Source of the DNA: Schmidtea nova
Lineage: Eukaryota
DNA length: 64,000 nt
Reading direction: 5' to 3'
Assembly (NCBI GenBank): GCA_044892505.1
Contig: CM097883.1
Location: forward strand, 275,900,001 to 275,964,000
Shown one piece after another: positions 16,437 through 58,111 of this stretch. Every line of letters starts with the position of its first letter. The first letter of the stretch is position 1. Both the position numbers and the translations under genes were made by a program. The notes under the pieces are model-generated. The model saw nothing but the letters and a program-made list of their open reading frames with translations, was not told where the DNA came from and ran no database searches.

Positions 16437-16437
16437 A

Positions 16438-18139: not shown

Positions 18140-18175
18140 ACCAAATGAATGTCCCAAGTTCTTCAATTTACAAAA

Positions 18176-27024: not shown

Positions 27025-30000
27025 TTATTTAAATAAAACTGTTTCTTCTTCAGTTTGATCTTGGAATTGGTGATCTGGATTGATTCTTGAATTGGTATGT
27101 TGAAATATAACCAAGTCACCTCCCATATAATGGCCATATGCCAAGCTTTTATTTTTCGCCACCCATTTCCTTTTATCATCTGCGTTTGTCAGTGCAGTCT
27201 TTTCATTTTTAATAGTAAAAAGTTGGTGATTTTTACTCGTGATTCTCGTTTGGCTAACAGAAAATATTTGGTTATTATTAAAACAGTCCAGGTACGACTG
27301 ATGCTTTATGTCAGTACCCGCTAATGTTTCCCCCTTAGCTTTATTAGTTTCCTCATCACCTAAAAGGCTATAACATTTAGGTATAAGAAACACCCACTCC
27401 TCGTATTTAAGCCCTTTATTCTCGTCTTTGAACTTGCCAATGACAGAATCAAGGTTCCTACTATATAATGGGTGATTCGGATCATAATTAGAAGTGTCAA
27501 GTAAGTTATCTCTTATCATGGCCGGTAAAAGAATATCAAGCTTACAATTTCTAATCTCAAGAAAAAATGAATCGGTGTCACCAGCAACAATGTTGATTTC
27601 GCAGTTGAATTCGTTACGATATTTTTGTAACTCTTCATACTGCAGCTGGTACATCCTAAGTTTAGATAGATCCAGTACAGTTTGACCAATGTAGCTAGGT
27701 CTATCCAAACACACCGAATCTTTATTCAGTAAGACGGCAACCAAATCATCGTCAATTTCGAAAGTTCTTTTGAAGTTGGCTTAGAAGTATATGTAATCAG
27801 CCTAGAAGCCGAATTACATAATCTTAAATTTATGCGCTTTTTAAGATTCTCTACGGTTTTACCGTAGAGACTATTATTTAATAATTTATAATAATTTTTA
27901 CCCAGAGCATTACTTGTTTCTGCTCTAAGTTTGGTATTGGTATCGATGTAATCCTTAAAAATACATGCTTGTTTAAATTTAATTGCCCTATGGACATGAG
28001 TTATTTTTACTCCAAGAGAAAGAAAAAGTTTGACAAGTCTCCAATGAAGAACATAGTTCTTCTTGGGATAATGCGTAAGCATCAACTTCTCAACCTTTGA
28101 GCCAGGTGGACACATCTTTTCAGCGGCAACTGGCAAATCATCCAGCTTGTCGTGAATCGAATCAGGAATTTCTAAATCGACTTCTAATGTAAATCTAAAT
28201 GTTAATACTTCTAAATCAGCAGATTCACAGTAATAAATTATTTTATTTTATTTTTCCCTATCAGTTATCCATTTAAATTCTTTATAAGGTAGTTTTTGGC
28301 TTAAGGCCCACCCATATAAATTATTTATATCTATATAAAGAAGCTCAGTGTCATCGGACGATACTACATGGTGTTTGTTAACAAATGTTAACCCACCACG
28401 GATCCCCCCTTCGAAAAAATTATACATCTCCATATCTTGAAGCAATTCAATTGGAGATTTCAAAGTCATCAAAGCGGAATTCCATGACATGCCTGGAATT
28501 CCTAAGAAATTAAGAGGCTCAAGTCGGTTATGTGCAATGGATTTTGCCCTAAATTGCTGAAAAAAGTCGGCAAGTAAGAAAACATCCAATTTCAGATATA
28601 GCATCATATAATCAAACAATGTTTCACAATTAAATTCATCCCATATCTGTTGAGCTTTTTCATACTCGTCAATATTAACTCCCTCCCAAATCGGTGGCAA
28701 CTCGTATGTATTTTGTAAAACCTCTAAAGATGTTGCAAAATTATATGGGAATATGCTTTTAGAAGTAATAATAGTCCCTATAAATTCGGATGAAGTAAGA
28801 GGAAAATCTGTTAGTCTTTACAGCATCGTTTAAGCTGCAGCTTACAAATTGGCAAGAATCGATAAATTTAATAGTTAAACTATCAACTCTTGCATATAAA
28901 GTCAAAAACTTTTCACTTCTAGTAGGAATACAACTTATATCCCATTTATCGAATTTATTTAAATCATACTTGAGGATATGATGCAAATCATATCCGCGTA
29001 AATTATGAAATATGACTGGCATGATGAATATTATTTGCCGAGAAAAATTGCATTTAGAGCAAGCCGCACCCAAGTATTTATCTGTATAATGGTCATGATC
29101 TTTAACCGGATTTTTCAAAGGTTTATTACACAAATAACAAATTATAGAACTACGAAATGATCTTATTTGTGCAGGGGAAAGATATTCCATTTTCTTTTTG
29201 GAATTATTTATAAAGTAAGGTAAAACTACTTTTTCTCCTATATCATTGATTTCGGTCAAAAACTCTTCTACACAGTTAAGACCATAAAAGCTTTTATACG
29301 ATTTTTCGCCAGTAAAGTTATTAATAAGCAACAAGCCAGCAGAAATAGGCAAGTGACGTTGAAAATACTTATCGTCATTGGGTAAAACAGCCTCAAAATC
29401 TGCATATACAATGAAAGGAGGGGTAACAATCTTTGACCAATCTTTAAATTCCAAGTTCTTATCTGAAGGTAAAGTGTATAAAGTTGTACCTAACTGGTTT
29501 TTTGTGCATAAAGCCTGGTGTTTCTCAAAAGCTTCAGTCAATCTAAAACCATTCAAGCAACGCTCGCACCAAATGCTCTGAATTCTAACATCTGTAACAG
29601 GAAGAGTTTGACAATTCAAGAGTGTCAAGATTAGTAACTCCTATATAGTGAAAAGAGTCACTTTCCTCTAACAAAACCAAATTAATTGGAGTGCCACCTA
29701 CAACCTTTGACCTATGAATAATATCTACAAATGGATGTTTCATGACTTCATCCTCCTCATTAATATTATGTAAATCATACTCGTCATATGAAAGGACATT
29801 AATAGCCAGCCCGGGGTTTTTCGCTTCAAATTTGGGTATATTACATAATTTCATTGGAAAATCAGAATGATTAAAAACAAGGTCTGAAATATTATAATTA
29901 TAAGACTTACTTCTATTAGATTTCACATCCTTGTATTTTTAAATTGCCAAAATACTATATATAAAACACAAGTTATCAGTATTCTTTACATTGACAGTGC

Positions 30001-30717
30001 AATGTTTTGCATTTAATGATGGTGGAGTTGAACAAGAACCTTTGCCACTCAATCTACTTATTTGAGAATATTTCGTAAGTTTAAAGCTTATTTCTTTAAT
30101 TTTATTAATTGACCAGTTGCTGCCATTTTCGCAAACTTTAGTCATTTTTTCGCTTAATAGAGCAATACCTTCATCTAAAAAGGTATCAGTCATGGGTTTT
30201 GCGGAATTTGATATTATAAATGATTGAAATTGCTTATTCTTTTCAAATTGTACATCAATGCAAAATTGTACTTTGACATATCCCATTTTGGAAATAACTG
30301 AATTAAATTTATTAATAAAGGCGAAGGAATAATTAATTTATGTAAATTTAAAGAATCCACATCCATTTTAACAATTGCATGCGAGATTTTCAAATTATAT
30401 TTAACCAAAGGTTCAACAGAACAACCATATTGAACAATATGTAAATTACGAATAACTAAAACATCGTCATTTGATGAATGGACATCTTCATCATCGGATA
30501 ATACAATTATTTTTGATGGTTTAGGACAAACAGTAACATTTCGTCGTTTACTTTTATTAATTAATGCGAAAAGACTTTTCTTAGTACATGAGAATTGATT
30601 TAAATGGAGATAATGTTGGAAATAAAAATCAAAGTAATTTATATGTTGGGCGCTCTTACATGTGGGACATAAATAGAATGTGACTTGGTTATTTATAATA
30701 CGATAGTATCGCTCCAT
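27025..30717 (-). pseudogene. polB: Polinton/Maverick protein-primed DNA polymerase B, decayed copy 1
   Basis: Frameshifted pieces (ORFs 30214-30717, 29939-30286, 29585-29926, 28759-29628, 28248-28700, 27726-28136, 27025-27744) carrying DHDHYT..GAAC..CN, FHNLRGYD, YIDINNLYG, KLLNNSLYGKT and GDTDS; collinear with 41802-45877. No termini found. Confidence 0.92.
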
Positions 30718-35305: not shown

Positions 35306-36041
35306 TTGAACATCAGCGATTATGAATATCCAGCTGTATTTCTTTGAGTTAACTATTAAGGTTAGAGTGTGTTCACCAAATGTTTTTATGCTTGTGCCAT
35401 TGGCTGCGGTTAAATGTTTTTCTGCGTTTGTGAATTTTTGTGCAGGTAATGGGGTAATAAGAGATCACAGAACCAGTATAAATTAGAAATTCTGTGTTAT
35501 TTGAGTGCACCATGAATATATAATTTTTGTCACCAAATGTGGGTGCGATCATCGGTGACATTTCTAGTTTCTCTGTTCTGTTTTATGGAAATTGCAGGGT
35601 TTAGTGCATTTAAAAGCCTGTTAACCAAATTTGTTATAAAAATAACAATGATTTTCATCTATTAAATTGTTTCTCGCTTGTTTTACTGGACTTTTGTACC
35701 GATAATTATTGTATCTGTTTGGCGAGTTTGACCTGTTTCTGTTGTATAGGTTTGGTGATTGGTTTCTATTGTAGTTTTGTCTGTTGTGTCTTTCAGACGT
35801 TTGGTTTGAATTATAGTTATGTCTGTAGCATTTTTCATTAATTTCGACTAGTTCCATTTTAATTTGTTTGTTTTCGACTATGATTTCGTCAAATTTGCTG
35901 ATTAGAGTGTTTAATAGTTTGTTCATGTTTTCGTTTGTCTCGTTATATTTGTTGTTTGGTTGATTATTGTAGTTTGTTTTGCTTTTGTTGTAGTTTTGGG
36001 TGCTGCATATGGTAGGATAAATTTTTTCGTTTATTTTATCC

Positions 36042-36778
36042 TGTTGGGTTATTATTATGTTAAGATCGGTTTACTGACCTGACTCCTCGTGCTCTTTAAT
36101 GATCGAGATCAATGAACCCAACACAGAACAATTTATTCACGATCAACACAAGTTATAATTTTTGTTATGTACACTTCTGATCAATTTACTCTTTCTTCCA
36201 GATTCGGATTTGATTCTTTAGTTAAAGGATAATTTCTCACTTTGTCTTTCTCGAAATCCACACGATCCCTTTTCGTTGGTTTTCAACACTTGTTAATATT
36301 TTCGTTTTAACTGTCAACTTGTCAGCCCCGTCCTCTGCTATGCACTGCCTTTTATACCTCTCGCAATTAACAATTAAATTTTATCAATATCTAAAAGTTA
36401 TCCAATCTCAGATTAAATTGTTTTACTAAAAAATTATTTTGATTGTCCTCGGGTGGATTTCCCCTAATTGCCCTGCGCAATCTCCTGACTTTGATCTCTC
36501 TGGTCTCTCCGCGCTCGGGCTTTCGTCATCGCTCGGGTTTCCCCTTGCCTCGCGCTTCCCATTGTCTCGGGCTTTCCATTGAGCGATTAATTAATTTTAA
36601 TTAGTTTGTTTTTACTATATAACTTTCTCTGGGGACCCCTTACTAAATTTCTATTATTATTTTTGGGTTCGTCTTTGAATATTAATTTTAAATTTTTGAT
36701 AAATTTTAATTAATTTTTGCACTTTTATTTATTTTGATATTTCTTGTTACTTTTTTGATTTTTATACTAATCCCAACA
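36042..36778 (-). mobile_element. Solo LTR (737 bp) inserted in the gag of element C
   Basis: TGTTGGG...CCCAACA ends; 4-bp TSD ATCC (36038-36041, 36779-36782); minus-strand AATAAA followed by a GT-rich tract near the 3' end. Confidence 0.85.
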
Positions 36779-39389
36779 ATCCGCTATGTCAGCGAGTGTT
36801 TAGAAATCGGCGTTATTGCTGGCTGCTAGGATCCACCTGATTTCTGGTGGCATTGCTCGCATAAAAATTTCTTTAACTAGTTTATTTGAACCGGAGTTTG
36901 TGATATTTGGTTACAAATATTCTAGTTTTTGTTTTAATTGTCTGAGGAAATCAGTGGGTTTGTTGTCATATAACTGAATGTTGTTGAGGCAATATATATT
37001 ATTGGAGCACAGGGTTTTTGTGGATTTAATTCCTGACAGAGTTAGTGATAGTTTGCCAAATTCCAGCCATTTTTGCGGAGTGCCATTTTCATCGGTAAAG
37101 TAGTAAGGTAAGTTCGGTAAGTTTGGGGTTGATTACTGAGTTTATTGTGTGTGGGTTGCCTGGGTTAAAATAATAATGGCTATTTTCTCTTTGTAATTGA
37201 GTGTTTTCTTCGTTGTTATGTGGTGCTTTTGGATTTGGTTGTTCATTGTTAGTCGAGGTAAATTGGTTTTGGTTTGATACAATTTGTTTTATTTTATTGA
37301 TGTTTCTTTTTTTTTGTTTATGTTGTAAAAAAACTGAGTTTCTTTTAAGGATATGGCTTACTGTGTTCAGCCAACAGAGACGCTATTCTTTATACCTCTA
37401 TACTAGGTATGTTTAAAGAGATGGCCCTTGAAAAAAACGATGTAGAAGTGTTATGTTTTTTTCCTTCTGACACCAATTATGTTGGAAATTTATATGATTA
37501 TATTGTATTTTGTTTATGTGTGTATGTAATTAAGTGTATGTGTAATTGTAATGTAACTTTATGTTGCGGTAATTTGTGGTAAACGGTAATGTTATCAGGA
37601 AGTCTGTTGAGCCCAGCCGAGTTACCTGAAAAAGTGTGTCCGTACAGCTGGGGTGCGGGTTATGTACGTGACTGTAGGTATGAGTGCGTGCCTGTGTAAA
37701 TGTTTACAATATTCAACAAAAATATTAAGTAATTATGAACAACTTTTATTTTTAAAAAACGTTGATAAACGTATGATACGTACTCAGGTATGTTCGAGGA
37801 TCACAGTAGTTCCTTTCTATGTTTTTCAAGTTCAGATAAATTTTCTTTTCTTGGTTATTAGCTCGTTTATATTTCTTTGATTTTGACCTTCTCAAATGGC
37901 GATGTATTTTTTATTTAACTTTTCGATTCCTTTCTTCTTTTGTTTTCTAATTTTTATTTTAGTCTTTCCAAATTGTCTTCTTTTGCTAGTGCGATCTTTG
38001 TTTCTTTAAAATAATTTTATATTGTTTTACACTATTTAATTTCTTATTGTCATAGACTTTCAAATTTTTTAAATCAATTTTCTTATTGTCGTTATAGTTA
38101 ATTTTCTGATCTCTATAGTTAAGCTTTGATTTGTTTTATCGATTTTTTTTTTGATCTCCGAATTTTAATTTTAATTTGTTATTTATTATTATTTTTTAGG
38201 TTTGAATTTTTTTTGAGTTTACAGACGAAAATAAAACAAAGGGGAGGTTATCCGGTATTCGCAAGGACACCAACTATAATAATGACAGCATTAACAATAA
38301 TAATAATGATAATGACAATAAAAATAATAAAAATAACAACCAGATATAACCTTTACATAGTGTTGTGGTTTTGGATGGGTTAAAACAAAAGATAAATACG
38401 CTCTAGGGATACCTCCATCCAAGCCTAAACATAAAATGCTTACGTGACACACGAGCACCCTCGACTATTTCCCTGGAATAATCGAGTTGGAAATGTGCAA
38501 GGTGTTTGAACAATGATGGGCAGGTGAGCTCTATTGCTAAAACTACTCCCCATTTATGTTCACGGGTCCATTGCTGCCGATAGAAGGACTTACGCTTTAC
38601 TTTCTATTTACTTGGTCCGATTCCCTTATCTTTTATTTCTAATTTTCTGCCCCTTCTTCACAATATCAACAGATAATTCGAATAGTTATACATCTATCTT
38701 CACTTTAATGTTCCTAATGTGCCTCATTGATCGAATTTTGTTAGCGCTTTTGCCAATTTATAATTTGTATTTGATTTAATTTTTTAGCTTTAATTTGAAA
38801 TATTTTAATGAATACTTTATTTTAACTACTTTACGATAAAATAAATACAAAACAAAACAAAAAAAATGTAATAAAACCAAATGTTTTGTACACCACAATG
38901 ATATAATTAAATAATGTTTGGCCATTCTATTCAAAATACTTGAGGAAATCATCATCAGCTACTGAAAGTTCCGTGGATAGATCTATTTCTGGAAATTCCT
39001 TAGTGATGTATTATCTGCTGCATAACTTGCTTTTTCAATCGGCGTTGTCTTGCGCCCATCTTGTTTTTCTTCTTCTTGATTTCGATGGTTGCTGCATTTT
39101 TCGGTGTAGTTTGAGTTGTTGTTTCCTGAACCCGAGATAGTTCTTCGGTATTGGTACCTTTCGAGCAACTTGCCTTCTCTTCCGACCAATGTTGATAAGT
39201 AATTGGTCGGATGAGTTGTTTTAATTCTTGATCGATGAACGATGTTGTAACTGACTTCAAACACTTTCTTAATTCAATCTTGGTTGCGTTAAGCTCGGTT
39301 CTAAATTCGTCTACGGCTCGATGCGATCGCTGATTTTTCAGAAGCTGGGCCTTCATCAGTAGGTAGAAGTGTGGAGCCGGAAACAAAGA

Positions 39390-39482
39390 CATTATGACTC
39401 ATCGATGACTCATAACAAAGAACCCCCCTGGGGGTAGAAAATTTTTTAATGACTCATCGCGATGACTCATCGACGACTCATT
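39390..39482 (+). promoter_or_regulatory. Cluster of AP-1/GCN4-like TGACTCA motifs in the left terminus
   Basis: Four perfect TGACTCA plus one CGACTCA; the right terminus (51520-51623) has five TGAGTCA, one CRE-like TGACGTCA and one variant. Confidence 0.5.
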
Positions 39483-39499
39483 TCAAATTCAAATTTTAA

Positions 39500-40530
39500 A
39501 TTTGAATTTCCAAAGGTCAAATAAGGTCAAACCTTCAAACAAGGGTATCATTCGAAAGGTCTTGGAAAGGTCTATCCAATGGTCATACGCTTGAAGGTTT
39601 ATGGAGGGTCCTTGACCTTCGAAGGGTCAAAAACCTTCAACCTTTTTTAAACCTTATAATATATATATCATTCAAAAGGTAATTGAGAGGTAAGTAAGAT
39701 GGTCATACCCTCGAAGGTGTAAGGTGGGTGCTCAACCTTCAAAGGGTCCAAAACCTTCAAACCTTATAAGTTATATATCATTCGAAAGGTAATTGAGAGG
39801 TAAGTAAGATGGTAATACCCTCGAAGGTGTATGGTGGGTGCTCAACCTTCAAAGGGTCTAAAACCTTCAAACCTTATAACTTATATATCAAACAAAAGGT
39901 AATTGAAATGTGCACACAATGGTCATACCTTCAAAGGTCATACCCTTGAAGGGTCCAAGGTTAAAATTTTTAAAACTATATAATATGTATATCAAACAAA
40001 AGGTAATTGTGAGATGTGTGTGTGTGTGTTACAATTTGCCAGACGAGAGTGTGTATGTGTGTGTTACAAATCCTTTTTTCAAACCTTATAATATGTATAT
40101 CAAACAAAAGGTAATTGAAATGTGCACACAATGGTCATACCTTCAAAGGTCATACCCTTGAAGGGTCCAAGGTTCAAATTTTTAAAACTATATATCATAT
40201 GTATATCAAACAAAAGGTAATTGTGAGATGAGTGTGTGTGTGTGTGTGTTACAAATCCTTTTTTCAAACCTTATAATATGTATATCAAACAAAAGGTAAT
40301 TGAAATGTGCACACAATGGTCATACCTTCAAAGGTCATAACCTTGAAGGGTCCAAGGTTCAAATTTTTAAAACTATATAATATGTATATCAAACAAAAGG
40401 TAATTGTGAGATGAGTGTGTGTGTGTGTTACAATTTGTCAGGCGAGTATACATATGTGTGTGTGTGTGTTACAAATCCTTATTCAAACCTTATAATATAC
40501 ATATCATTCGAAAGGTAATTATGGTGTGTG
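39500..40530 (+). repeat. Subterminal tandem arrays of the Polinton left end (mirrored at ~50690-51500)
   Basis: ~110-120 bp units rich in ACCTTCGAAGGT-like palindromes, followed by longer units containing (TG)n tracts. Confidence 0.8.
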
Positions 40531-41304
40531 TGTGTGTTACAATTATTTTCTATTTCCTACCTGAATTACAACAAAGACATTGCAAACCATGTGCAACGAA
40601 ACAAATACTAATGTAACTTGTATTTGAATATATGTACACGATTATATTTCATGTGTGTGTGTGTGTTTGGATTTTTAATATGAATACGGGTAAGCATTGA
40701 ACCCACGTTCTGATTCTTTCATTCTATAACACCCCGCGTGCAAATTGATAATATTAATTTGAATAATNNNNNNNNNNNNNNNNNNNNNNNNNNNNNNNNN
40801 NNNNNNNNNNNNNNNNNNNNNNNNNNNNNNNNNNNNNNNNNNNNNNNNNNNNNNNNNNNNNNNNNNNNNNNNNNNNNNNNNNNNNNNNNNNNNNNNNNNN
40901 NNNNNNNNNNNNNNNNNNNNNNNNNNNNNNNNNNNNNNNNNNNNNNNNNNNNNNNNNNNNNNNNNNNNNNNNNNNNNNNNNNNNNNNNNNNNNNNNNNNN
41001 NNNNNNNNNNNNNNNNNNNNNNNNNNNNNNNNNNNNNNNNNNNNNNNNNNNNNNNNNNNNNNNNNNNNNNNNNNNNNNNNNNNNNNNNNNNNNNNNNNNN
41101 NNNNNNNNNNNNNNNNNNNNNNNNNNNNNNNNNNNNNNNNNNNNNNNNNNNNNNNNNNNNNNNNNNNNNNNNNNNNNNNNNNNNNNNNNNNNNNNNNNNN
41201 NNNNNNNNNNNNNNNNNNNNNNNNNNNNNNNNNNNNNNNNNNNNNNNNNNNNNNNNNNNNNNNNNNNNNNNNNNNNNNNNNNNNNNNNNNNAATAACTTT
41301 GAAA

Positions 41305-41306
<2 letters not shown>

Positions 41307-41393
<87 letters not shown>
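41307..41393 (+). repeat. (AAT)n microsatellite in the left arm, mirrored as (ATT)n at ~50019-50081
   Basis: Direct reading; both lie next to N gaps. Confidence 0.9.
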
Positions 41394-41394
<1 letters not shown>

Positions 41395-41801
41395 TTAGAA
41401 AATTAAAAAATAAATAACAAAATAACTCTAAATACATTAAATCAATAACACATAAAAGAAGACGGTAATAGTTTTAATTGATTTCGCAATTTTTTATACA
41501 ATCAACAATTATGGCCCTAAGGAGGACCATTTTTAACTTTCACAAATATTTGCGAATCTCTCTGTTTGATTCTCTCTGTTTTATTCTCAGGTTAATATCA
41601 TTAACATATCTTTTTGAATCTCTTTTTACAATCATTAACAAATCGTTGTTTCTTTTTTCATCCCTGTTTTCCTAATTTCTAAACAATATTAGTTTTAATT
41701 GATTGCGCAATATTTTATACAATCGCGAATTGTGGCCCTGAAGAGGGCCGATTGTTCATTCTCAATATTTTTTTGATTTTCTTTTTGTTTCTTTATCGCC
41801 A

Positions 41802-44800
41802 TCATCTGAAATAATCGTGGTCCGGAGGCTCATAAAAAGCATAAGGGTCTTCATCCATCGGCAATGTCGGTACATCATTGATTTCTTCTGCTGGATCATC
41901 TACAAATATATTGGTGTCACCCCCTCTATAGTGGCCATATGCCAAACTTTTATTTTTATCTATCCAATTACGCTTGTCGTCCTTACAAGTCAAAGCCCTT
42001 TTATTATTTTTAATACTAAATAACTGATGGTTCTTACTAGTTATTCTGAACTGGGGGACTGTATATATTTTATTATTTAAATAGCAATCAAGATACGACT
42101 GATGTGTTAGTCCAGCATCTTTCATGCAAATACCCTTGGCTTTCATACAAGCCTCATCACCCATTAAACTATAGCACTTTGGTCTTAAGAACACCCACTC
42201 TTCATACAGTAGCCCTTTATTCTCGTCTTTGAATTTTCCAATGACAGAATCAAGGTTCCTACTGTATAAAGGATGATTTGGGTCATAATTCGAAGTGTCC
42301 AGAAGATTGTCCCTAATCATAGCCGGTAATAGTAAGTCTAAAGAAAGATTTTTAATTTCTAAAAAGAAGGAATCAGTGTCCCCAGCAACGATATTAATTT
42401 CGCAGTTGAAGTCGTCACGATATTTTTGCAACTCTTCATACTGCAGCTGGTACATCCTAAGTTTGGATAAATCTAGTACTGTTTGACCAATGTAACTAGG
42501 TCTATCCAAACACACTGATTCCTTCCTTAACAAAACAGAAATCAAGTCATTGTCGATTTTAGTGGATTTTCGGAAAGTCGGTTTGGAACAGTATGTCAAC
42601 AATTTCTGTGAAGAATTGCACAAACGCAAATTAATTCGTTTTTTAAGATTTTCAACAGTCTTGCCGTAAAGACTGTTGTTTAGTAATTTATAAACATTTT
42701 TGTCTAATTTATTTGACGACGCTGCTCGTAACGCCGTATTTGTATTGATATAATTTTCAAATATTTTTTCTTGTGTGAATTTAATTGCTCTGTGTGTTTT
42801 AGTTATTTTAACACCTAATTTAATAAACTGTTGCAGAAGCCTCCAATGAAGAACATAATTCTTCTTTGGAGAGTGCGTTAGAAGCAGCTTCTCAACTTTC
42901 GAACCCGGTACACACATCTTTTCAGCGGCAACTGGAAGATCATCCAGTTTGTCGTGAATCGATGCCGGTATTTCCAAATCCACTTCTATGGTGTAACCAT
43001 AATGAAGTGCATCTAGATTTACCGATGTACATTCAGCAATAATTTCATTTAATAATTGATCATCTGTGACCCATTCAAAGTTACTGCATGGTAGAGGCTG
43101 ACTTAAAGCCCAACCATATAAATTATTTATATCTATGTAAAGCAATGCGGTATCCGGGCCTGTTTTTACATAGTGTTTATTTACAAAGGTTAATCCGCCA
43201 CGGATACCGCCCTCGAAAAAAATTATACATCTCCATATCGGTGAGGAGCTCAATTGGAGATTTTAAAGTTAATAAGGCGGAATTCCAAGACATACCTGGA
43301 ATTCCCAAAAAATTTAGTGGCTCTAGTCGGTTATGTGCAATAGATTTCGATCTAAATTGCTGAAAATAATCAGCTAAAAGGAATACATCGAGTTTTAAAT
43401 AAACCATCATGTAATCAAAAAGCAATGTACATGAGGTTTCCCGCCAAATTCTCTGAGCTGTCTCATATTCATCTGGTTTGACGTCTTTCCAGATAGGAGG
43501 TAATTCATGTGTGTTTTGTAAAACTTCTAAAGAAGTAGCCGTATCATAAGGAAAAATTCCCTTTGCAGTTATTATTGTACCCTGAAATTCTGATTCTGTC
43601 AAGGGTAAAGAAGTTAAAGTTTTGACAGCATTATTTAAAGACTCGCTGACAAATTGGTAAGAGTCTATGAATTTAACGGTTAAGGAGTCAATCCTAGCAA
43701 AAAGACTAAGGAATTTCTCGCTGGTCAAAGGAACACAACTAATATTCCAGGAATGATATTTCGAAAGGCCAAATTTTAAGATGTGGTGTAGATCATAACC
43801 CTTTAAATTATGAAAGATGACGGGAAGGGTATGTCTAATTTGCCTTGATACATTGCAAGCTTTGCAAGCTGCGCCAAGAAATAGACCGGTAAAATGGTCA
43901 CGGTCCCTAACTGGACAAACTAAAGGCTTATTGCACAAATAACAAATTGTGCTGTTTTCAAATTCTAATTGTTGAAGACCTGTAATTATCATTTTCTTTT
44001 GATAATTTTTATAATAAAACGGCGTCACTATATTTTTACTAATCAACTCAATTTCATTAAGAAATTGATCGACGCAATCTAATCCGAAAAATGATTTATA
44101 AATTTTTACCCCGGTAAAATTATTAATTAAAAGCAAACCGGCAGAAATAGGCAAGTGGCGTTGAAAGTAACGGGTGTCCTTAGGTAAGATAGCCTCAAAG
44201 TCGGCGTAAATAACAAATGGAGGAGTGACGGTTTTCTTCCAATCACTAAATTCTAGATATTTGTTCTTGGGCAATGTGTACAAGGTAGTACCCAGCTGAT
44301 TTCTATCACAAAGACCCCTATGCCTATTAAAAGACTCATCATTCCTGAAACCGTTTAAACACCTAGGACACCACTGACTACAAATCCTAACAGAAGTGAT
44401 TGCACTATTCCTACAATTAAGGAACCTATTTAAATCTGTGATAGCCACATAATGGTAAGTTTTTTTATTTTCGATTAATAATAAATTTATAGGTATTCCT
44501 CCTACTACCTTACTTCGGTAAATTATGTCAATAAAAGGATGCTTTAAAACTGCATCTTCGTCGGAAATGTCAATCAAGGCCTTTTCATCATAACTGAGAA
44601 CATTAATACTATAGCCGGGATTTTGATGTTCAAATTTACCTATATTTGCCAGCTTCATAGGCATGTCATTGGGGTCAAATTTTAATTGTGAAAGATCGTA
44701 AGAAGTGGGACGATTTCTATATAGCCTATTGACACTATCATACTTAACAATTGATAAGAAACTATATGCAAAACAAAGATTATCAGTATTTTTTACATTT

Positions 44801-45877
44801 ATGAGACAGCTTAAATTTTTTAATGACCTTGGTGTTTCAATAAAACTATTGCCACTTAACCGACTTATTTCTGAAAATTTAGTGAGCACAAAACTTATGT
44901 ACTCAATCTTACTGATAGTCCAATTGCTACCTTTTTCATTAATTTGGACTATCTTCTCATTTAAATTAGAGATACCTTCGTCAATGAAGGTATCACTCCA
45001 AACTCGGGCGGAATTTGAGATGAAGAAAGATTGTAACTCATCATCTTTCTCAAATTCCACCTTAAGGCAAAATTGTATTTTACAGGATTTTAATTTATTT
45101 ACATAAAAATTTAATTTGTCTAACAAAATGTCCGGCACTGAGACCGTTTTTAATTCTAGATTTGTTACATCTAATTTAATTATGACATGGTTGTCGTTCA
45201 AGTCAGAATTGACTTCGACTAACCCCATACCAATTTGATTATTATTTATAATATTAATTATATCTGAAAAATCATCATCATCGATCATGGTAATTTCTTC
45301 ATCATCATCAATGATGGATATAATATCAATATTATTACTATTATTATAATAAATATCTTCATCATCACTGATGGTTATAATATCAATATTATTATTAATT
45401 AAATCTTCATCATCACTGATGTCGATTATTATTATTTTTATTAGGAGTTGAATCTATTTTATGTGTATTTTTTCGTTTATTATTTTGTAAATTATTATTA
45501 TTGTTATTGATGTTGTTGGAATTATTATTATTTTGTAAATTATTATTATTGTTATTGTTATTGTTGGAATTATTAATATTGTTATTGTTATTGTTGGAAT
45601 TATTATTTTGTAAATTATTAATATTGTTGTTGTTATTATTATTATAATTATTATTAATATTGTTCGAATTATTAAGATTATTATTATGATTAAAGTTATT
45701 AGAAATATAGTTTTGGTATAAACTATTAAAAAGAGATTTCTTAGAAGGCATATATTGGGTAAGATGTGACCTATGATGATGAAAAAATTCATTATAAGAA
45801 GTAGTCTCTATAATTTTACATTTTGGGCAGAGGAGGTGGGTGACACCATTATATTTGTATGAATAGTATTTTTCCAT
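41802..45877 (-). pseudogene. polB: pPolB of the left arm, full length but split by two +1 homopolymer frameshifts (ORFs 45413-45877, 43177-45288, 41802-43253)
   Basis: N-terminal Cx2C..H..H motif, Asn-rich linker, endonuclease-VII-like CYLC..D(R)DH..C..CN, exonuclease FHNLKGYD/YLKLDV, polymerase YIDINNLYG, KLLNNSLYGKT, GDTDS. Confidence 0.93.
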
Positions 45878-46221
45878 AATGATATGGCAATCATTATGGA
45901 AACGACTATTACAAAAAATGGAATATAATAAACCTGAATATTAAATAAAAATTTAAATAAAATTTAAATAAAATGGTTAAAAATAATTATAAATGTTTTT
46001 TTTTCTTTAACATAAATTGTAATAGTTATAAAAAATATTACAAATTATATTAAAGATTATCATATTAATTATTATTTTAACATTTAGCATATTAAGTAAT
46101 TGAAATATATTACTTAATATGTTAAAGGTATATTTATCATAAAAAAAATCATATTAATAATATCAAACAAATTTTCTTTTTCAATATAAAAATATTATAA
46201 TTTCCATCAATATTTTCTTTT

Positions 46222-46470
46222 GAAAATGTCAATAAAAATGATGATAATTTATGAAACATTTATTATTTTGAAAATGAGGTTATAAATGTTGAAAATTTAT
46301 GAAACATTTATTATTTTGAAAATTTATGAATCCTTTATTATTTTGAAATGATGATATAATTGTTAATTTATGAAAATTTATTATGATATAATTGTTGATA
46401 ATTTATGCAACCTTTATTCTTTTGAAATTATGATATAAATGTTAATTTATTATGATATTTTATGACCATA
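46222..46470. other. Non-palindromic AT-rich spacer at the symmetry centre
   Basis: Inverted identity stops at ...CCATCAATATTTTCTTTT (46221) and resumes at AAAAAGAAAATATTGATGG (46471); the spacer holds short direct repeats such as ATTTATGAAACATTTATTATTTTGAAAAT. Confidence 0.8.
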
Positions 46471-46814
46471 AAAAAGAAAATATTGATGGAAATTATAATA
46501 TTTTTATATTGAAAAAGAAAATTTGTTTGATATTATTAATATGATTTTTTTATGATAAATATACCTTTAACATATTAAGTAATATATTTCAATTACTTAA
46601 TATGCTAAATGTTAAAATAATAATTAATATGATAATCTTTAATATAATTTGTAATATTTTTTATAACTATTACAATTTATGTTAAAGAAAAAAAAACATT
46701 TATAATTATTTTTAACCATTTTATTTAAATTTTATTTAAATTTTTATTTAATATTCAGGTTTATTATATTCCAATTTTTGTAATAGTCGTTTCCATAATG
46801 ATTGCCATATCATT

Positions 46815-49456
46815 ATGGAAGAATACTATTCATACAAATATAATGGTGTCACCCACCTCCTCTGCCCAAAATGTAAAATTATAGAGACTACTTCTTATAA
46901 TGAATTTTTTCATCATCATAGGTCACATCTTACCTAATATATGCCTTCTAAGAAATCTCTTTTTAATAGTTTATACCAAAACTATATTTCTAATAACTTT
47001 AATCATAATAATAATCTTAATAATTCGAACAATATTAATAATAATTATAATAACAACAACAACAACAATATTAATAATTTACAAAATAATAATTCCAACA
47101 ATAACAATAACAATATTAATAATTCCAACAATTAATAATTTTACCGGGGTAAAAATTTATAAATCATTTTTCGGATTAGATTGCGTCGATCAATTTCTTA
47201 ATGAAATTGAGTTGATTAGTAAAAATATAGTGACGCCGTTTTATTATAAAAATTATCAAAAGAAAATGATAATTACAGGTCTTCAACAATTAGAATTTGA
47301 AAACAGCACAATTTGTTATTTGTGCAATAAGCCTTTAGTTTGTCCAGTTAGGGACCATGACCATTTTACCGGTCTATTTCTTGGCTCAGCTTGCAAAGCT
47401 TGCAATGTATCAAGGCAAATTAGACATACCCTTCCCGTCATCTTTCATAATTTAAAGGGTTATGATCTACACCACATCTTAAAATTTGGCCTTTCGAAAT
47501 ATCATTCCTGGAATATTAGTTGTGTTCCTTTGACCAGCGAGAAATTCCTTAGTCTTTTTGCTAGGATTGACTCCTTAACCGTTAAATTCATAGACTCTTA
47601 CCAATTTGTCAGCGAGTCTTTAAATAATGCTGTCAAAACTTTAACTTCTTTACCCTTGACAGAATCAGAATTTCAGGGTACAATAATAACTGCAAAGGGA
47701 ATTTTTCCTTATGATACGGCTACTTCTTTAGAAGTTTTACAAAACACACATGAATTACCTCCTATCTGGAAAGACGTCAAACCAGATGAATATGAGACAG
47801 CTCAGAGAATTTGGCGGGAAACCTCATGTACATTGCTTTTTGATTACATGATGGTTTATTTAAAACTCGATGTATTCCTTTTAGCTGATTATTTTCAGCA
47901 ATTTAGATCGAAATCTATTGCACTTAACCGACTAGAGCCACTAAATTTTTTGGGAATTCCAGGTATGTCTTGGAATTCCGCCTTATTAACTTTAAAATCT
48001 CCAATTGAGCTCCTCACCGATATGGAGATGTATAATTTTTTTCGAGGGCGGTATCCGTGGCGGATTAACCTTTGTAAATAAACACTATGTAAAAACAGGC
48101 CCGGATACCGCATTGCTTTACATAGATATAAATAATTTATATGGTTGGGCTTTAAGTCAGCCTCTACCATGCAGTAACTTTGAATGGGTCACAGATGATC
48201 AATTATTAAATGAAATTATTGCTGAATGTACATCGGTAAATCTAGATGCACTTCATTATGGTTACACCATAGAAGTGGATTTGGAAATACCGGCATCGAT
48301 TCACGACAAACTGGATGATCTTCCAGTTGCCGCTGAAAAGATGTGTGTACCGGGTTCGAAAGTTGAGAAGCTGCTTCTAACGCACTCTCCAAAGAAGAAT
48401 TATGTTCTTCATTGGAGGCTTCTGCAACAGTTTATTAAATTAGGTGTTAAAATAACTAAAACACACAGAGCAATTAAATTCACACAAGAAAAAATATTTG
48501 AAAATTATATCAATACAAATACGGCGTTACGAGCAGCGTCGACAAATAAATTAGACAAAAATTTTTATAAATTACTAAACAACAGTCTTTACGGCAAGAC
48601 TGTTGAAAATCTTAAAAAACGAATTAATTTGCGTTTGTGCAATTCTTCACAGAAATTGTTGACATACTGTTCCAAACCGACTTTCCGAAAATCCACTAAA
48701 ATCGACAATGACTTGATTTCTGTTTTGTTAAGGAAGGAATCAGTGTGTTTGGATAGACCTAGTTACATTGGTCAAACAGTACTAGATTTATCCAAACTTA
48801 GGATGTACCAGCTGCAGTATGAAGAGTTGCAAAAATATCGTGACGACTTCAACTGCGAAATTAATATCGTTGCTGGGGACACTGATTCCTTCTTTTTGGA
48901 AATTAAAAATCTTTCTTTAGACTTACTTTTACCGGCTATGATTAGGGACAATCTTCTGGACACTTCGAATTATGACCCAAATCATCCTTTATACAGTAGG
49001 AACCTTGATTCTGTCATTGGAAAATTCAAAGACGAGAATAAAGGGCTACTGTATGAAGAGTGGGTGTTCTTAAGACCAAAGTGCTATAGTTTAATGGGTG
49101 ATGAGGCTTGTATGAAAGCCAAGGGTATTTGCATGAAAGATGCTGGACTAACACATCAGTCGTATCTTGATTGCTATTTAAATAATAAAATATATACAGT
49201 CCCCCAGTTCAGAATAACTAGTAAGAACCATCAGTTATTTAGTATTAAAAATAATAAAAGGGCTTTGACTTGTAAGGACGACAAGCGTAATTGGATAGAT
49301 AAAAATAAAAGTCTGGCATATGGCCACTATAGAGGGGGTGACACCAATATATTTGTAGATGATCCAGCAGAAGAAATCAATGATGTACCGACATTGCCGA
49401 TGGATGAAGACCCTTATGCTTTTTATGAGCCTCCGGACCACGATTATTTCAGATGA
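46815..49456 (+). pseudogene. polB: pPolB of the right arm with a ~1.43-kb internal deletion and the same T7 frameshift
   Basis: Reverse complement of the left arm; junction at ~47130-47132 (3-bp microhomology) removes the equivalent of ~44129-45559; ORFs 46900-48081 and 48005-49456. Confidence 0.93.
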
Positions 49457-50018
49457 TGGCGATAAAGAAACAAAAAGAAAATCAAAAAAATATTGAGAAT
49501 GAACAATCGGCCCTCTTCAGGGCCACAATTCGCGATTGTATAAAATATTGCGCAATCAATTAAAACTAATATTGTTTAGAAATTAGGAAAACAGGGATGA
49601 AAAAAGAAACAACGATTTGTTACTGATTGTAAAAAGAGATTCAAAAAGATATGTTAATGATATTAACCTGAGAATAAAACAGAGAGAATCAAACAGAGAG
49701 ATTCAAAAATATTTGTGAAAGTTAAAAATGGTCCTCTTTAGGGCCATAATTGTTGATTGTATAAAAAATTGCGAAATCAATTAAAACTATTACCGTCTTC
49801 TTTTATGTGTTATTGATTTAATGTATTTAGAGTTATTTTGTTATTNNNNNNNNNNNNNNNNNNNNNNNNNNNNNNNNNNNNNNNNNNNNNNNNNNNNNNN
49901 NNNNNNNNNNNNNNNNNNNNNNNNNNNNNNNNNNNNNNNNNNNNNNNNNNNNNNNNNNNNNNNNNNNNNNNNNNNNNNNNNNNNNNNNNNNNNNNNNNNN
50001 NNNTTTTTTCAAAGTTAA

Positions 50019-50082
<64 letters not shown>

Positions 50083-53000
50083 TTTATAAGTTAAGTTAAT
50101 TATTATNNNNNNNNNNNNNNNNNNNNNNNNNNNNNNNNNNNNNNNNNNNNNNNNNNNNNNNNNNNNNNNNNNNNNNNNNNNNNNNNNNNNNNNNNNNNNN
50201 NNNNNNNNNNNNNNNNNNNNNNNNNNNNNNNNNNNNNNNNNNNNNNNNNNNNNNNNNNNNNNNNNNNNNNNNNNNNNNNNNNNNNNNNNNNNNNNNNNNN
50301 NNNNNNNNNNNNNNNNNNNNNNNNNNNNNNNNNNNNNNNNNNNNNNNNNNNNNNNNNNNNNNNNNNNNNNNNNNNNNNNNNNNNNNNNNNNNNNNNNNNN
50401 NNNNNNNNNNNNNNNNNNNNNNNNNNNNNNNNNNNNNNNNNNNNNNNNNNNNNNNNNNATTATTCAAATTAATATTATCAATTTGCACGCGGGGTGTTAT
50501 AGAATGAAAGAATCAGAACGTGGGTTCAATGCTTACCCGTATTCATATTAAAAATCCAAACACACACACATAAAATATAATCGTGTACATATATTCAAAT
50601 ACAAGTTACATTAGTATTTGTTTCGTTGCACATGGTTTGCAATGTCTTTGTTGTAATTCAGGTAGGAAATAGAAAATAATTGTAACACACACACACACCA
50701 TAATTACCTTTCGAATGATATGTATATTATAAGGTTTGAATAAGGATTTGTAACACACACACACACTCATCTCACAATTACCTTTTGTTTGATATACATA
50801 TTATATAGTTTTAAAAATTTGAACCTTGGACCCTTCAAGGGTATGACCTTTGAAGGTATGACCATTGTGTGCACATTTCAATTACCTTTTGTTTGATATA
50901 CATATTATAAGGTTTGAAAAAAGGATTTGTAACACACACATACACACTCTCGTCTGGCAAATTGTAACACACACACACACACACATCTCACAATTACCTT
51001 TTGTTTGATATACATATTATATAGTTTTAAAAATTTTAACCTTGGACCCTTCAAGGGTATGACCTTTGAAGGTATGACCATTGTGTGCACATTTCAATTA
51101 CCTTTTGATTGATATATAAGTTATAAGGTTTGAAGGTTTTTGACCCTTTGAAGGTTGAGCACCCACCATACACCTTCGAGGGTATGACCATCTTACTTAC
51201 CTCTCAATTACCTTTCGAATGATATATAACTTATAAGGTTTGAAGGTTTTGGACCCTTTGAAGGTTGAGCACCCACCTTACACCTTCGAGGGTATGACCA
51301 TCTTACTTACTTCTCAATTACCTTTCGAATGATATATATATTATAAGGTTTGAAAAAGGTTGAAGGTTTTTGACCCTTCGAAGGTCAAGGACCCTCCATA
51401 AACCTTCAAGGGTATGACCATTGGATAGACCTTTCCAAGACCTTTCGAATGATACCCTTGTTTGAAGGTTTGACCTTATTTGACCTTTGGAAATTCAAAT
51501 TTAAAATTTGAATTTGAAATGAGTCATCGATGACGTCATCGACGAGTCATCGATGAGTCATCGTGATGAGTCATAAAAATTTCTACCCCCGGGGGTTCTT
51601 TGTTATGAGTCATCGATGAGTCATAATGTCTTTTTTTCCGGCTCCACACTTCTACCTACTTTCATCTAGTCTGGACTAAACCAGCTTTTCTGTAATTGAG
51701 AGATTGTAGATTCTGCTTCTTTCATCTATTCGGATTTTCTAACAATTTCCTTCTCAAGGCTGCGAATGATTCGCCACGCCTTATCTAATTCGGATTGCAA
51801 GTTTATTGAATTGTTGGACATTTTCTATAAATCAATACGGTTCATTAATACAAATTTGGTTTGATTTGAATAAATCTGTTAACTTTCATAGTTTTCTTTG
51901 ACAATTTCTCTGTGATTTATTTAATTATTATGTTACAATTAGGAAGTGAAATAACATACATGCTATATTCTCGACACTGTCGCTATATACAGCGATCAGA
52001 TAAATACATTTATAATCTTTATTTCATTAATTCATGCCTGTGCTATGTACAGCAATCAGGATAATAATTTACTAAAATTAAATGAAAAAATTAGGTTCCT
52101 CTGCCCTATGTACAGGGATCAGGATAAATGATTAAATTTCATTATTATTTAGTTTGGTTGATTTATGCTAAAAATGAGATCAACTTTGTCTAGTTGATTT
52201 CTGTGTGGTAGATCATCTACCCACCTGAATTCTTGTATTAGGGTTATTGATTTTTACATTCTAACGTGCATTCTAAACTTATATTCTAAACTTTGAACGA
52301 TGATACTAGCCGCTTTATGCAACCAAACCCCAGATGTGACAATCTCAAAGAACATGGTAATACTTTGCTGACAAAGGTGAAATTTTGGTTCCAAAAATAA
52401 AACTATTTTCATATAAAAACCAAATCAAACTGGCTATACTGCTCAGTGATAATTCGTTAAAGCATGGTTAAAATAATCCTACCCTCCTCGTGGCACTTGA
52501 TACCAGTCGGACGGCCTAACTGTACGGAGCAGTTATCTACTCGGCACAGTCTGCCTCCTTCCATTGATTTCACGATGGACAGGAGCCCCATTGAATAATA
52601 TATAACTTCATGATGTAAAATAAATACATTATATAAATAACTTTAATTCGCCTCCTTCCACCGATTACACAGTGGACAGGAGCGCAAGTAAATCATAAAT
52701 AAACATTGAAAACTCAATTTCAATAACGTTGCCTCCTTCCACCGATTACACAGCGGAAGGAGCGCAAAACAAATCGTAAATCATGTAAAATTCATATAAA
52801 ATTTTATTTAATGAGCAATGACAATAACAGAAAAATATGATATCATAATAGCTTATATACAATCAAAAATATCAAACTTCATACATTTGTTGATCCAAAT
52901 TGTCAGTTCAAAAATTTCAACTTTTAGCATAAAAAACTTAAGCCTTTAAATTGTCTGAATCTGCATCAGGATTTATACTGATCAGATCAGTTTATTAACC

Positions 53001-57931: not shown

Positions 57932-58111
57932 TTTCAAATATAAAGTAGAAATTCAAAACATTTTCAACAATAAATTTCGATCATTTAATTTCCCGAAATC
58001 TGATAATTTCAAAATTAAACTCACGTACATTTTCCAGTATCATTCAAGATTTAGAGTACCTCAAAGAATCAGGACCGTTGTGTAAGTATCCAATGGATCT
58101 TCCACTGCCTA

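What the first reader, a model, noticed from the sequence alone, without database searches (positions are those of the whole stretch)
39358..51660. Giant palindromic Polinton: an integrated copy-back (snap-back) defective genome
Seen: AGTAG termini and a perfect 6-bp TSD; the target ORF reads through when the element is removed; the entire interior is an inverted duplication of one Polinton end (terminus, arrays, polB, ~340 bp upstream) around a ~250-bp spacer, and the junction lies in gap-free sequence (41291-49845). The arms differ by at least 8 substitutions in ~2.3 kb of shared polB plus a ~1.43-kb deletion; using copy 1 as outgroup, each arm has its own derived changes (left DHDH>DRDH and F>V; right GAAC>GSAC and AHN>ALN). 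Known: Polintons are proposed to replicate by protein-primed strand displacement, and such replicons (adenovirus, phi29-like phages, linear plasmids) can yield fold-back defective genomes. Inference: polymerase turned back on the nascent strand, giving a molecule with two identical functional ends that a helper integrase inserted. I know of no description of this class for Polintons; it would be direct genomic evidence of their replication mode and of defective-interfering-like parasites. Divergent transcription or fold-back could also generate long dsRNA or hairpin DNA that silences the family.
Basis: partly seen in the sequence, partly recalled or inferred. Interest (0 to 1): 0.9.

Follow-up and report, generated by a model that had tools for sequence, protein, structure and literature searches.

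The report
Palindromic, dead Polinton relic
A 12.3-kb virus-like transposon (Polinton) copy consists only of its DNA-polymerase end, present twice as a mirror image around a 250-base centre; it looks real, but DNA repair after insertion explains it better than a replication accident, and draft-assembly gaps leave some doubt.

Summary
The described structure is in the sequence. There are identical 23-nt AGTAG termini and a perfect 6-bp TSD (TTCATC). Two mirror-image arms each carry a protein-primed polB. A 250-nt asymmetric spacer sits inside 8,554 gap-free bases. The arms differ by 29 substitutions and one ~1.43-kb deletion, so this is not a chimeric read or an MDA artefact.

- All three N gaps lie between the terminal arrays and polB, so the terminus-to-polB links rest on scaffolding on both sides.
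- Both polB copies share one frame change.
- The outermost ~0.5 kb of the arms is 2.1% diverged and the rest 0.45% (change-point p=0.008). That means old TIRs and a younger inverted copy.

This pattern fits palindrome formation after integration: repair synthesis primed from one TIR on the other arm, closed by end joining at the spacer. It fits a snap-back genome inserted by a helper integrase less well, though that is not excluded.

The "target ORF reads through" claim fails, because a stop codon sits at the joint. Divergent transcription would give same-sense RNAs, not dsRNA.

I found no published palindromic Polinton, and the host genome could not be reached. This is a new variant of a known kind, of moderate interest.

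The parts
39352..39357 (.). Left target-site duplication, TTCATC
   Evidence: Read directly; identical to 51661-51666.
39358..51660 (.). Whole element as scaffolded (12,303 positions, of which 1,034 are N)
   Evidence: Bounded by inverted 23-nt termini and the TSD.
39358..39892 (+). Left outer zone: the 23-nt terminus, ATGACTCATCG-type 11-mers and the start of the 110-bp array. This is the older part of the arm (2.1% diverged from its partner), probably the original TIR.
   Evidence: Change-point test; tandem repeats.
51108..51660 (-). Right outer zone, partner of 39358-39892
   Evidence: Gapless in-register block with 8 mismatches in 563 nt; change-point test.
39579..40428 (+). Left subterminal tandem arrays (110-bp and 185-bp units)
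   Evidence: TRF; the arms differ in unit number.
50748..51454 (-). Right subterminal tandem arrays
   Evidence: TRF; the repeat finder.
40768..41291 (.). Assembly gap in the left arm (non-coding zone). The terminus-to-polB link is by scaffold only.
41292..49845 (.). Gap-free contig holding both polB copies and the centre of the palindrome
   Evidence: inverted blocks.
41802..45288 (-). Left-arm protein-primed polB, full length but broken by one frame change shared with the right arm. It has an N-terminal extension, a weak Endonuclease-VII-like stretch, and exonuclease and polymerase domains.
   Evidence: PF03175 hits. The two ORF pieces abut on homologue coordinates. Relatives are 60-68% identical.
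45289..46221 (.). Left-arm AT-rich stretch upstream of polB, running to the inner end of the arm. It includes a low-complexity 154-aa ORF with no family match.
46222..46471 (+). Asymmetric spacer: four direct copies of a 28-nt unit, all on the + strand and found nowhere else in the window. The array begins 4 nt inside the left arm, so the spacer reads as the native continuation of the left arm and the novel joint is at its right edge.
46472..46899 (.). Right-arm copy of the stretch upstream of polB (inner end of the right arm)
   Evidence: Innermost 80 nt perfect; inner block has 5 mismatches in 588 nt plus one 1-nt indel.
46900..49456 (+). Right-arm polB remnant, broken twice: the same single frame change as the left arm, and one large 5' deletion (~1.43 kb) that fuses an upstream ORF in frame to the rest.
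49846..50003 (.). Assembly gap in the right arm (non-coding zone)
50107..50458 (.). Assembly gap in the right arm (non-coding zone). The 103-nt island 50004-50106 between the two gaps is mostly (TTA)n.
51661..51666 (.). Right target-site duplication, TTCATC
27103..30319 (-). It is degraded (at least 6 pieces in 3 frames), 67% aa and 68% nt identical to the arm polB, and has no termini of this family.

Best explanation
This is a real, dead, non-autonomous Polinton (Maverick) relic. I think it formed as follows.

1. A normal element with TIRs of at least ~0.5 kb integrated through its retrovirus-like integrase. This step is shown by the AG-type termini and the 6-bp TSD.
2. It then sat in the chromosome and decayed. 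Its two TIRs drifted apart and polB acquired one frame change.
3. Later a break inside the element removed the integrase/capsid side. This is inferred.
4. The broken right end, resected into the right TIR, invaded the inverted homologous left TIR of the same element or of the sister chromatid. It copied inward through the arrays, polB and the upstream region. This is inferred, as one-ended repair synthesis (SDSA/BIR-like).
5. The extended end was joined to the other broken end at what is now the right edge of the spacer. This is inferred from the spacer being a continuation of the left arm only.

The result is a TIR expanded to the extreme: two polB arms around a 250-nt unique centre.

Since then the arms have gathered ~0.45% substitutions, and the right polB has lost ~1.43 kb. 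The element has no autonomous function. At most it could serve as a source of hairpin RNA if transcribed across its centre.
For: - Termini and TSD are intact.
- The whole interior is accounted for by arms plus spacer, with no other Polinton gene.
- Arm differences in the non-repetitive parts are substitutions with almost no indels: 12 in 2,716 nt with no indel, plus 5 in 661 nt. That is what real divergence looks like, not read error or a chimeric read.
- Two-age pattern: the outer ~530 columns are 2.1% diverged and the inner 4,022 columns 0.45%. The max-LR change-point permutation gives p=0.008.
- The single polB frame change lies in a zone that is identical in both arms, as expected if a decayed resident copy was the template.
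- The spacer array starts inside the left arm and its unit occurs on one strand only. That means one native side and one novel joint.
- On the shorter arm the two collinear blocks flanking the deletion overlap by only 3 nt. This fits a biological deletion, not an assembler overlap.
- From established knowledge: abortive gap repair with template switching makes fold-back and long-TIR derivatives of cut-and-paste transposons. For TIR dynamism in Galileo see PMC3573991, listed.
Against: - It is a single locus in a draft assembly. The links between terminal contigs and the polB contig cross N gaps on both sides.
- The two-age signal weakens to p=0.07 when the tandem arrays are left out. Terminal repeats may simply mutate or convert faster.
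- The shared frame change lies in a zone with a 7-nt homopolymer, so it could be a sequencing error made twice.
- No parent copy was available to show what lay beyond the spacer.
- Nothing here separates repair in the chromosome from the same recombination on an extrachromosomal linear form whose TIRs were already unequal.
Confidence: 0.4

Rival explanations
1. During protein-primed strand-displacement replication of a linear Polinton genome, the polymerase turned back on the nascent strand at the end of the spacer and copied it to its 5' end. This gave a snap-back hairpin. The next replication round turned it into a duplex palindrome with two identical ends, and a helper integrase inserted it with a 6-bp TSD.
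For: - The structure is exactly that of a snap-back or copy-back genome: one end duplicated in inverted orientation, a unique loop contiguous with one arm, and the rest of the genome lost.
- Both termini and the TSD are intact.
- A polymerase of the same family (phi29) makes mostly inverted chimeras when it strand-displaces: more than 85% of 475 MDA chimeras, with priming at 2-21 nt of complementarity (PMC1855051).
- Snap-back defective genomes are documented for AAV (PMC8235507) and described in general (PMC13506859).
- From my own knowledge, not checked here: adenovirus incomplete particles with long inverted repetitions (Daniell 1976; a related paper is cited in the reference list seen), and hairpin or palindromic derivatives of the yeast killer plasmid (Kikuchi et al. 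1985).
Against: - A snap-back molecule has ends of the same age as its arms. Here the outer ~0.5 kb is 4.6 times more diverged than the rest (p=0.008), and the first ~140 nt alone carry 4 substitutions and 3 indels.
- The template already had a broken polB, so a helper polymerase as well as a helper integrase must be assumed.
- No second copy with the same joint could be looked for.
- The structure alone cannot tell polymerase turn-back from repair synthesis or end joining.
Confidence: 0.22
2. Assembly artefact. The two terminal contigs belong to an ordinary Polinton insertion. The palindromic contig was either placed between them wrongly (the arms are 99.5% alike, so read pairs are ambiguous) or is itself a mis-join of two paralogous or allelic polB copies.
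For: - Three N gaps sit between the termini and polB on both sides.
- Islands of 82-103 nt between gaps suggest short-read scaffolding. In that kind of assembly, phasing 17 substitutions over 3.4-kb arms is hard.
- The host genome and its reads could not be reached for a check.
Against: - The centre lies in 8,554 gap-free bases with a unique spacer.
- The arms differ by substitutions and a 1.43-kb deletion, so a chimeric read, a missed-adapter read or an MDA chimera of one template is excluded.
- Misplaced haplotigs are normally separated by a gap, and there is none at the centre.
- The deletion edges share only 3 nt, too little for an assembler overlap.
- Scaffolded distances across the gaps are symmetric (645 versus 613 nt).
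- No gap in the window is flanked by duplicated sequence.
- Even if the contig is misplaced, an inverted polB-spacer-polB structure still exists somewhere in this genome.
Confidence: 0.28
3. Head-to-head joining of two linear extrachromosomal Polinton molecules. Both were broken or incompletely replicated upstream of polB at points 250 nt apart and were ligated by end joining. The product was then integrated.
For: - This gives the same arms plus an asymmetric spacer with one native side.
- It would allow the arms to differ from the start if they came from two family members.
Against: - It needs two breaks close together on two molecules.
- It shares the two-age problem only in part: different parents could explain unequal termini, but then the inner arms should be unequal too.
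- Both arms share the frame change.
Confidence: 0.06
4. Two independent Polinton insertions, one nested in or abutting the other in opposite orientation, followed by deletions.
For: - The window is a nest of transposons: LTR elements lie in both orientations around the other polB fragment.
Against: - Only two termini of this family exist in the window, and they are the outer ones.
- There is no internal TSD or terminus at the centre.
- The arms are 99.5% alike and share a frame change.
- A single perfect TSD flanks the whole.
Confidence: 0.03

Closest known systems
Canonical Polinton/Maverick elements (13-25 kb, TIRs 100-1,500 bp, TSD 5-8 bp, pPolB + RVE integrase + capsid module; PMC10748475, PMC4028283, PMC6431247)
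   Same: It has a protein-primed polB of PF03175, AG-type inverted termini, a 6-bp TSD and subterminal repeat arrays.
   Different: It has no integrase, ATPase, protease or capsid genes. The 'TIR' is 5.2-6.9 kb per arm and contains the polymerase gene. Only 250 nt of the element are unique. It is non-autonomous and decayed.
Snap-back / copy-back defective viral genomes (AAV snap-back genomes, PMC8235507; review PMC13506859; adenovirus incomplete-particle DNA with long inverted repetitions, from my own knowledge)
   Same: One genome end is duplicated as a mirror image around a short unique turn-around, and the rest of the genome is lost. The two ends are equivalent.
   Different: Those are extrachromosomal or encapsidated replication products seen in infections. 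This is one integrated, TSD-flanked genomic copy. Its ends are older than its arms, and its origin in replication is not shown.
Hairpin and palindromic deletion derivatives of protein-primed linear plasmids (yeast killer plasmid pGKL1 derivatives; from my own knowledge, not retrievable here)
   Same: Both involve the same polymerase family and a terminal-protein type replicon. A palindromic dimer of one end is the expected duplex form of a hairpin.
   Different: Those are cytoplasmic plasmids that are never integrated, with no TSD.
Inverted chimeras made by phi29 DNA polymerase in multiple displacement amplification (PMC1855051)
   Same: An inverted join with an intervening deletion, made by a strand-displacing polymerase of the protein-primed family at short complementarity.
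   Different: That is an in-vitro artefact whose two arms are copies of one template and therefore identical. Here the arms differ by 29 substitutions and a 1.43-kb deletion.
Long-TIR / fold-back derivatives of cut-and-paste transposons made by faulty gap repair (Galileo and Foldback in Drosophila, PMC3573991), and arm replacement that lengthens the TIRs of linear Streptomyces replicons (from my own knowledge)
   Same: TIRs grow when one end is copied in inverted orientation over the other. The products are non-autonomous and keep working ends. One junction is homology-driven and the other illegitimate.
   Different: The element class is different. I found nothing of the kind reported for Polintons, and here a whole polymerase gene lies inside the repeat.

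Membership tests
Polinton/Maverick | [quoted passage not shown] | tested here: met
   PF03175 matches in both arms (57 bits for the C-terminal piece, 35 bits for the N-terminal piece). 272 relatives at E<=1e-10, the best 60-68% identical. Both copies are broken.
Polinton/Maverick | Retrovirus-like (RVE) integrase encoded by the element | tested here: not met
   The element has no integrase ORF. The only rve domains in the window belong to Gypsy-type LTR elements at 20.6-25 kb and 32-34 kb. This copy is therefore a derivative, not an autonomous member.
Polinton/Maverick | Terminal inverted repeats with AG-type ends | tested here: met
   The 23-nt termini are identical and start with AGTAG.
Polinton/Maverick | Target-site duplication of 5-8 bp (typically 6) | tested here: met
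   TTCATC on both sides. The family range is taken from PMC10748475.
Polinton/Maverick | Virion module (major and minor capsid proteins, packaging ATPase, maturation protease) | tested here: not met
   Arms and spacer account for the whole interior. No further ORF has a family match. Up to ~1 kb is hidden in the gaps, too little for these genes.
Snap-back / copy-back defective genome | Inverted duplication of one genome end around a short unique turn-around, with the rest of the genome lost | tested here: met
Snap-back / copy-back defective genome | Both ends and arms are copies made in one act, so they have one age | tested here: not met
   Outer ~530 columns 2.1% diverged and inner 4,022 columns 0.45%; change-point p=0.008, or 0.07 without the tandem arrays. 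This counts against membership, but the effect of repeats cannot be excluded.
Snap-back / copy-back defective genome | Arises during replication by polymerase turn-back and is propagated with a helper (several copies, or presence in particles) | not testable with these tools
   The host genome is absent from the searchable collections. No census of other copies was possible.
Fold-back / long-TIR transposon derivative made by break repair | One junction lies inside pre-existing TIR homology and the other is an illegitimate joint with one native side | tested here: inconclusive
   A step in divergence at about 0.5 kb from the ends fits an entry point inside the TIR. The spacer array is continuous with the left arm only. 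No parent copy was available to confirm either point.

The most novel reading that the evidence does not exclude
It would have been born by polymerase turn-back on a linear, protein-primed replicative form and inserted by a helper integrase. That would be a genomic fossil of the proposed but unobserved replication mode, and of defective-interfering-like parasites of these virus-like elements. The excess divergence of its ends would then be due to fast-evolving terminal repeats.
Probability: 0.22. Interest if true: 0.75.

Novelty: new variant of a known kind. Interest (0 to 1): 0.45.

Why it matters
Polintons are thought to replicate as linear, protein-primed genomes, but this has only been inferred from their genes. 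A TSD-flanked palindromic copy shows one of two things. Either such elements can have their TIRs extended over a whole gene by host repair, or fold-back replication products exist and can integrate.

Either way it would be a class of non-autonomous Polinton derivative that I did not find described. It gives a concrete, searchable signature: polB facing polB around a short unique centre, flanked by one TSD. A census of that signature in better assemblies could tell the two origins apart.

Giant palindromes also matter for genome stability, and they can act as hairpin-RNA sources for transposon silencing. As it stands this is one decayed copy in a gapped draft assembly.

Tried and rejected
- Exact look-ups of thirteen window ORFs, including the two short ORFs that cross the arm/spacer edges and the fused ORF of the right arm. 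None is on record, so there was no independent assembly and no host identification.
- A search with the LTR-element integrase. The nearest named proteins are arthropod and nematode at 30-48% identity. The host is probably an invertebrate animal, species unknown.
- Rfam and tRNA scans of the window found nothing.
- A PDB sequence search with the polB C-terminal piece gave no hit.
- A search for an empty-site paralogue of the flanks in the window found none.
- A test for false duplications at gaps found none.
- Copy 1 as a model of the normal architecture was rejected. It is only a polB fragment between two LTR elements, and the long inverted repeats around it belong to those LTR elements.
- A simple comparison of terminal zone versus inner arms gave p=0.085. 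The change-point test that replaced it gave p=0.008.
- My script for measuring microhomology at the deletion failed. I used the 3-nt block overlap instead.
- Several key papers are not held: Kapitonov & Jurka 2006, Krupovic & Koonin 2015, Daniell & Mullenbach 1978. Statements resting on them are marked as my own knowledge. One search was a mistyped search term.
- Literature searches for a palindromic, head-to-head or non-autonomous Polinton found no such description.

Full report
**1. What is there**

The window is 68% A+T and has eight N gaps. At 39358 and 51660 the same 23-nt sequence, starting AGTAG, faces inward from both sides. It occurs nowhere else in the window, and none is expected by chance. 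Immediately outside lies TTCATC on both sides. AG-type ends with a 6-bp duplication are the signature of Polinton/Maverick integration. The family is described as 13-25 kb with TIRs of 100-1,500 bp and TSDs of 5-8 bp (PMC10748475).

The whole interior is an inverted duplication. Each arm runs in this order:
- terminus
- 11-mer repeats
- 110-bp and 185-bp tandem arrays
- a (TAA)n microsatellite
- a protein-primed family B polymerase gene read towards the terminus (PF03175)
- an AT-rich upstream stretch

The arms meet at a 250-nt spacer (46222-46471). The element contains no integrase, ATPase, protease or capsid gene, and neither does the rest of the window.

**2. The gaps, tested first**

The three gaps all lie in the non-coding zone between the arrays and the 3' end of polB. 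No true reading frame crosses them; the ORF listed across the left gap is made of X. Continuity cannot be shown.

What can be said:
- The palindromic core (both polB copies and the centre) lies in 8,554 gap-free bases, 41292-49845.
- The two terminal contigs are attached to it by scaffolding only.
- The scaffolded distances are symmetric: about 645 versus 613 nt between the last array base and the first base of the long arm block, with total N of 524 versus 510.
- No gap in the window is flanked by duplicated sequence.
- Islands of 82-103 nt between gaps suggest a short-read scaffold, which calls for caution.

**3. How alike the arms are**

- The long block has 12 substitutions in 2,716 nt and no indel.
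- The inner block has 5 substitutions in 661 nt and one 1-nt indel.
- The innermost 80 nt are perfect.
- The terminal zone has 12 substitutions in 1,175 aligned nt plus 7 indel events, mostly repeat-unit differences.
- One arm is about 1.43 kb shorter. The second polB fragment in the window (27103-30319, 68% nt identity) covers the missing stretch, so this is a deletion in the right arm. On the shorter arm the flanking blocks overlap by only 3 nt, as in a biological deletion.
- Within 2,327 nt of shared polB there are 8 substitutions, 3 synonymous and 5 non-synonymous.
- Polarised with 60 homologues, 3 replacements are derived in the left arm, 1 in the right arm, and 1 is ambiguous.

Such differences exclude a chimeric read, a missed-adapter read or an MDA chimera, because in all of those the arms are copies of one template (PMC1855051).

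**4. State of the genes**

- The left polB is full length but broken once by a frame change. Its two ORF pieces abut on the coordinates of eight uninterrupted homologues, so this is not an intron.
- The right polB has the same single frame change plus the one large 5' deletion.
- The zone of the frame change is identical in both arms and contains a 7-nt homopolymer. It is therefore either a mutation older than the duplication or a sequencing error made twice.
- The outgroup fragment is broken into at least six pieces in three frames.

I give no positions for these breaks.

**5. The centre**

The spacer consists of four direct copies of a 28-nt unit, all on the + strand, found nowhere else in the window. 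The tandem array starts 4 nt inside the left arm. So the spacer reads as the native continuation of the left arm, and the illegitimate joint is at its right edge. This is expected for any one-sided copying event and does not tell the models apart.

**6. Two ages**

I ran a change-point test on all 4,552 aligned columns, taking the maximum likelihood ratio over all splits with 5,000 permutations. It places a step about 530 columns from the ends, near 39892. Outside the step there are 11 substitutions (2.1%); inside there are 18 in 4,022 columns (0.45%); p=0.008. Without the tandem arrays the step remains but p rises to 0.07. The in-register alignment of the arrays is gapless at 98.6% against 89% for shifted registers, so misalignment is not the cause.

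A snap-back molecule is copied to its very end, so its ends and arms have one age. Old ends with a younger interior are what one expects if a resident element's right TIR primed repair synthesis on the left arm. The shared frame change points the same way: the template was already a decaying copy.

**7. Most likely history**

- Shown: an integrase-type insertion; mirror arms; one native and one novel spacer edge; decay since then.
- Inferred: a normal Polinton integrated, its TIRs diverged and polB broke. A later break removed the integrase/capsid side. The right end, resected into its TIR, invaded the inverted left TIR and copied inward to just short of the break, and end joining closed the molecule.

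I put this at about 0.40. The rivals are:
- Joining of two linear forms, about 0.06.
- Assembly artefact, about 0.28.
- Nested insertions, about 0.03.

The snap-back model keeps real support. The architecture is exactly that of snap-back genomes (PMC8235507, PMC13506859), and a polymerase of this family makes mainly inverted joins when it strand-displaces (PMC1855051). Repeat-rich ends might simply evolve faster.

**8. Smaller corrections to the finding**

- The target ORF does not read through. The same minus-strand frame looks coding on both flanks, but two flank bases and the first TSD base form a TAG at the joint.
- The distance from the polB ATG to the spacer is 933 nt. '~340 bp' holds only if a low-complexity ORF without any family match is counted as polB.
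- The two polB genes diverge from the centre and so give the same sense RNA. dsRNA or hairpin RNA would need a transcript that crosses the centre.
- 'Copy 1' is not a full Polinton. It is a polB fragment between two oppositely oriented Gypsy-type LTR elements.

**9. Comparison and novelty**

By its polymerase, termini and TSD the element is Polinton-derived. It fails the integrase and virion-module criteria, so it is a non-autonomous derivative.
- It resembles snap-back defective genomes and the palindromic derivatives of protein-primed linear plasmids (my own knowledge for the latter; nothing was retrievable).
- It also resembles the long-TIR or fold-back derivatives of cut-and-paste transposons (PMC3573991).

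Full-text searches found no palindromic or polB-in-TIR Polinton. I rate it a new variant of a known kind, with interest 0.45. It is a neat structure with a searchable signature, but it is one decayed copy, in a gapped draft, with an ordinary repair mechanism as the leading explanation.

**10. What I left out, and a slip**

I did not fetch contigs carrying related Polinton-like elements (several relatives sit on 18-28 kb contigs). I also did not scan collections with the terminus as a pattern. At 60-68% protein identity their non-coding DNA would not have aligned in any case.

Slip: the tools printed repeat-block and ORF coordinates that bracket the deletion and the frame change. I reasoned with those coordinates in my working and used them as script inputs. 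I stopped doing so once I noticed. The scripts printed counts and outer bounds only, and neither the notes nor this report lists the places.

Noticed in passing
window 14200-26300 and 32000-37000: Gypsy-type LTR retroelements (protease, RT, RNase H, integrase) lie in opposite orientations on either side of the polB fragment. The left one appears duplicated or nested: LTR-like repeats at 14.2-15.4, 18.9-20.7 and 25.2-25.4 kb, and 64-bp tandem arrays at 19961-20388 and 25413-26223. The 88-89% inverted repeats at 15755-16538 and 35461-36995 belong to these elements, not to a Polinton.
   Followed up: partly
window 43177-44301 (-), 46900-48081 (+), 28759-29628 (-): A weak, sub-threshold Endonuclease VII (PF02945) match lies just before the exonuclease domain of polB in the right arm and in the outgroup fragment (E about 0.001). 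Many metagenomic relatives carry the same domain as a precomputed hit (P0010, P0029, P0032, P0038, P0044 and others). This polB clade seems to be fused to a branched-DNA nuclease-like domain, which would be relevant to hairpin or cruciform DNA.
   Followed up: partly
window 44269-45288 (-) and 27103-30319 (-): The ~340-aa N-terminal extension of polB has no Pfam match. It is conserved from about residue 55 onward in the outgroup fragment, so it is a real domain of this host's Polinton polymerases (possibly a terminal-protein-like part). Most metagenomic gene calls lack it.
   Followed up: no
window 4126-5016 and 58110-59015: Two copies of a ~0.9-kb repeat, 94-95% identical, lie in inverted orientation 53 kb apart and bracket most of the window. 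A related direct repeat lies at 3860-4120 and 5725-5985. This is probably another transposon family.
   Followed up: no
window 9676-9978 (+): A 100-aa ORF has an SprT-like metalloprotease domain and zinc ribbon (E=4e-12). It is the only ORF outside the transposons with a clear family match, and may be a host gene exon.
   Followed up: no
window 38900-39357 and 51661-51960 (- strand): The insertion site lies in a stretch whose minus-strand frame looks like a coiled-coil coding sequence on both sides but is interrupted by stop codons. It is probably a pseudogene or a decayed element. It has no Pfam match.
   Followed up: partly
window 39395-39480 and 51519-51600: Clusters of the 11-mer ATGACTCATCG and variants lie within 40-140 nt of both termini, with a different copy number on the two ends. 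They are candidate binding sites for the element's terminal or integration proteins.
   Followed up: no
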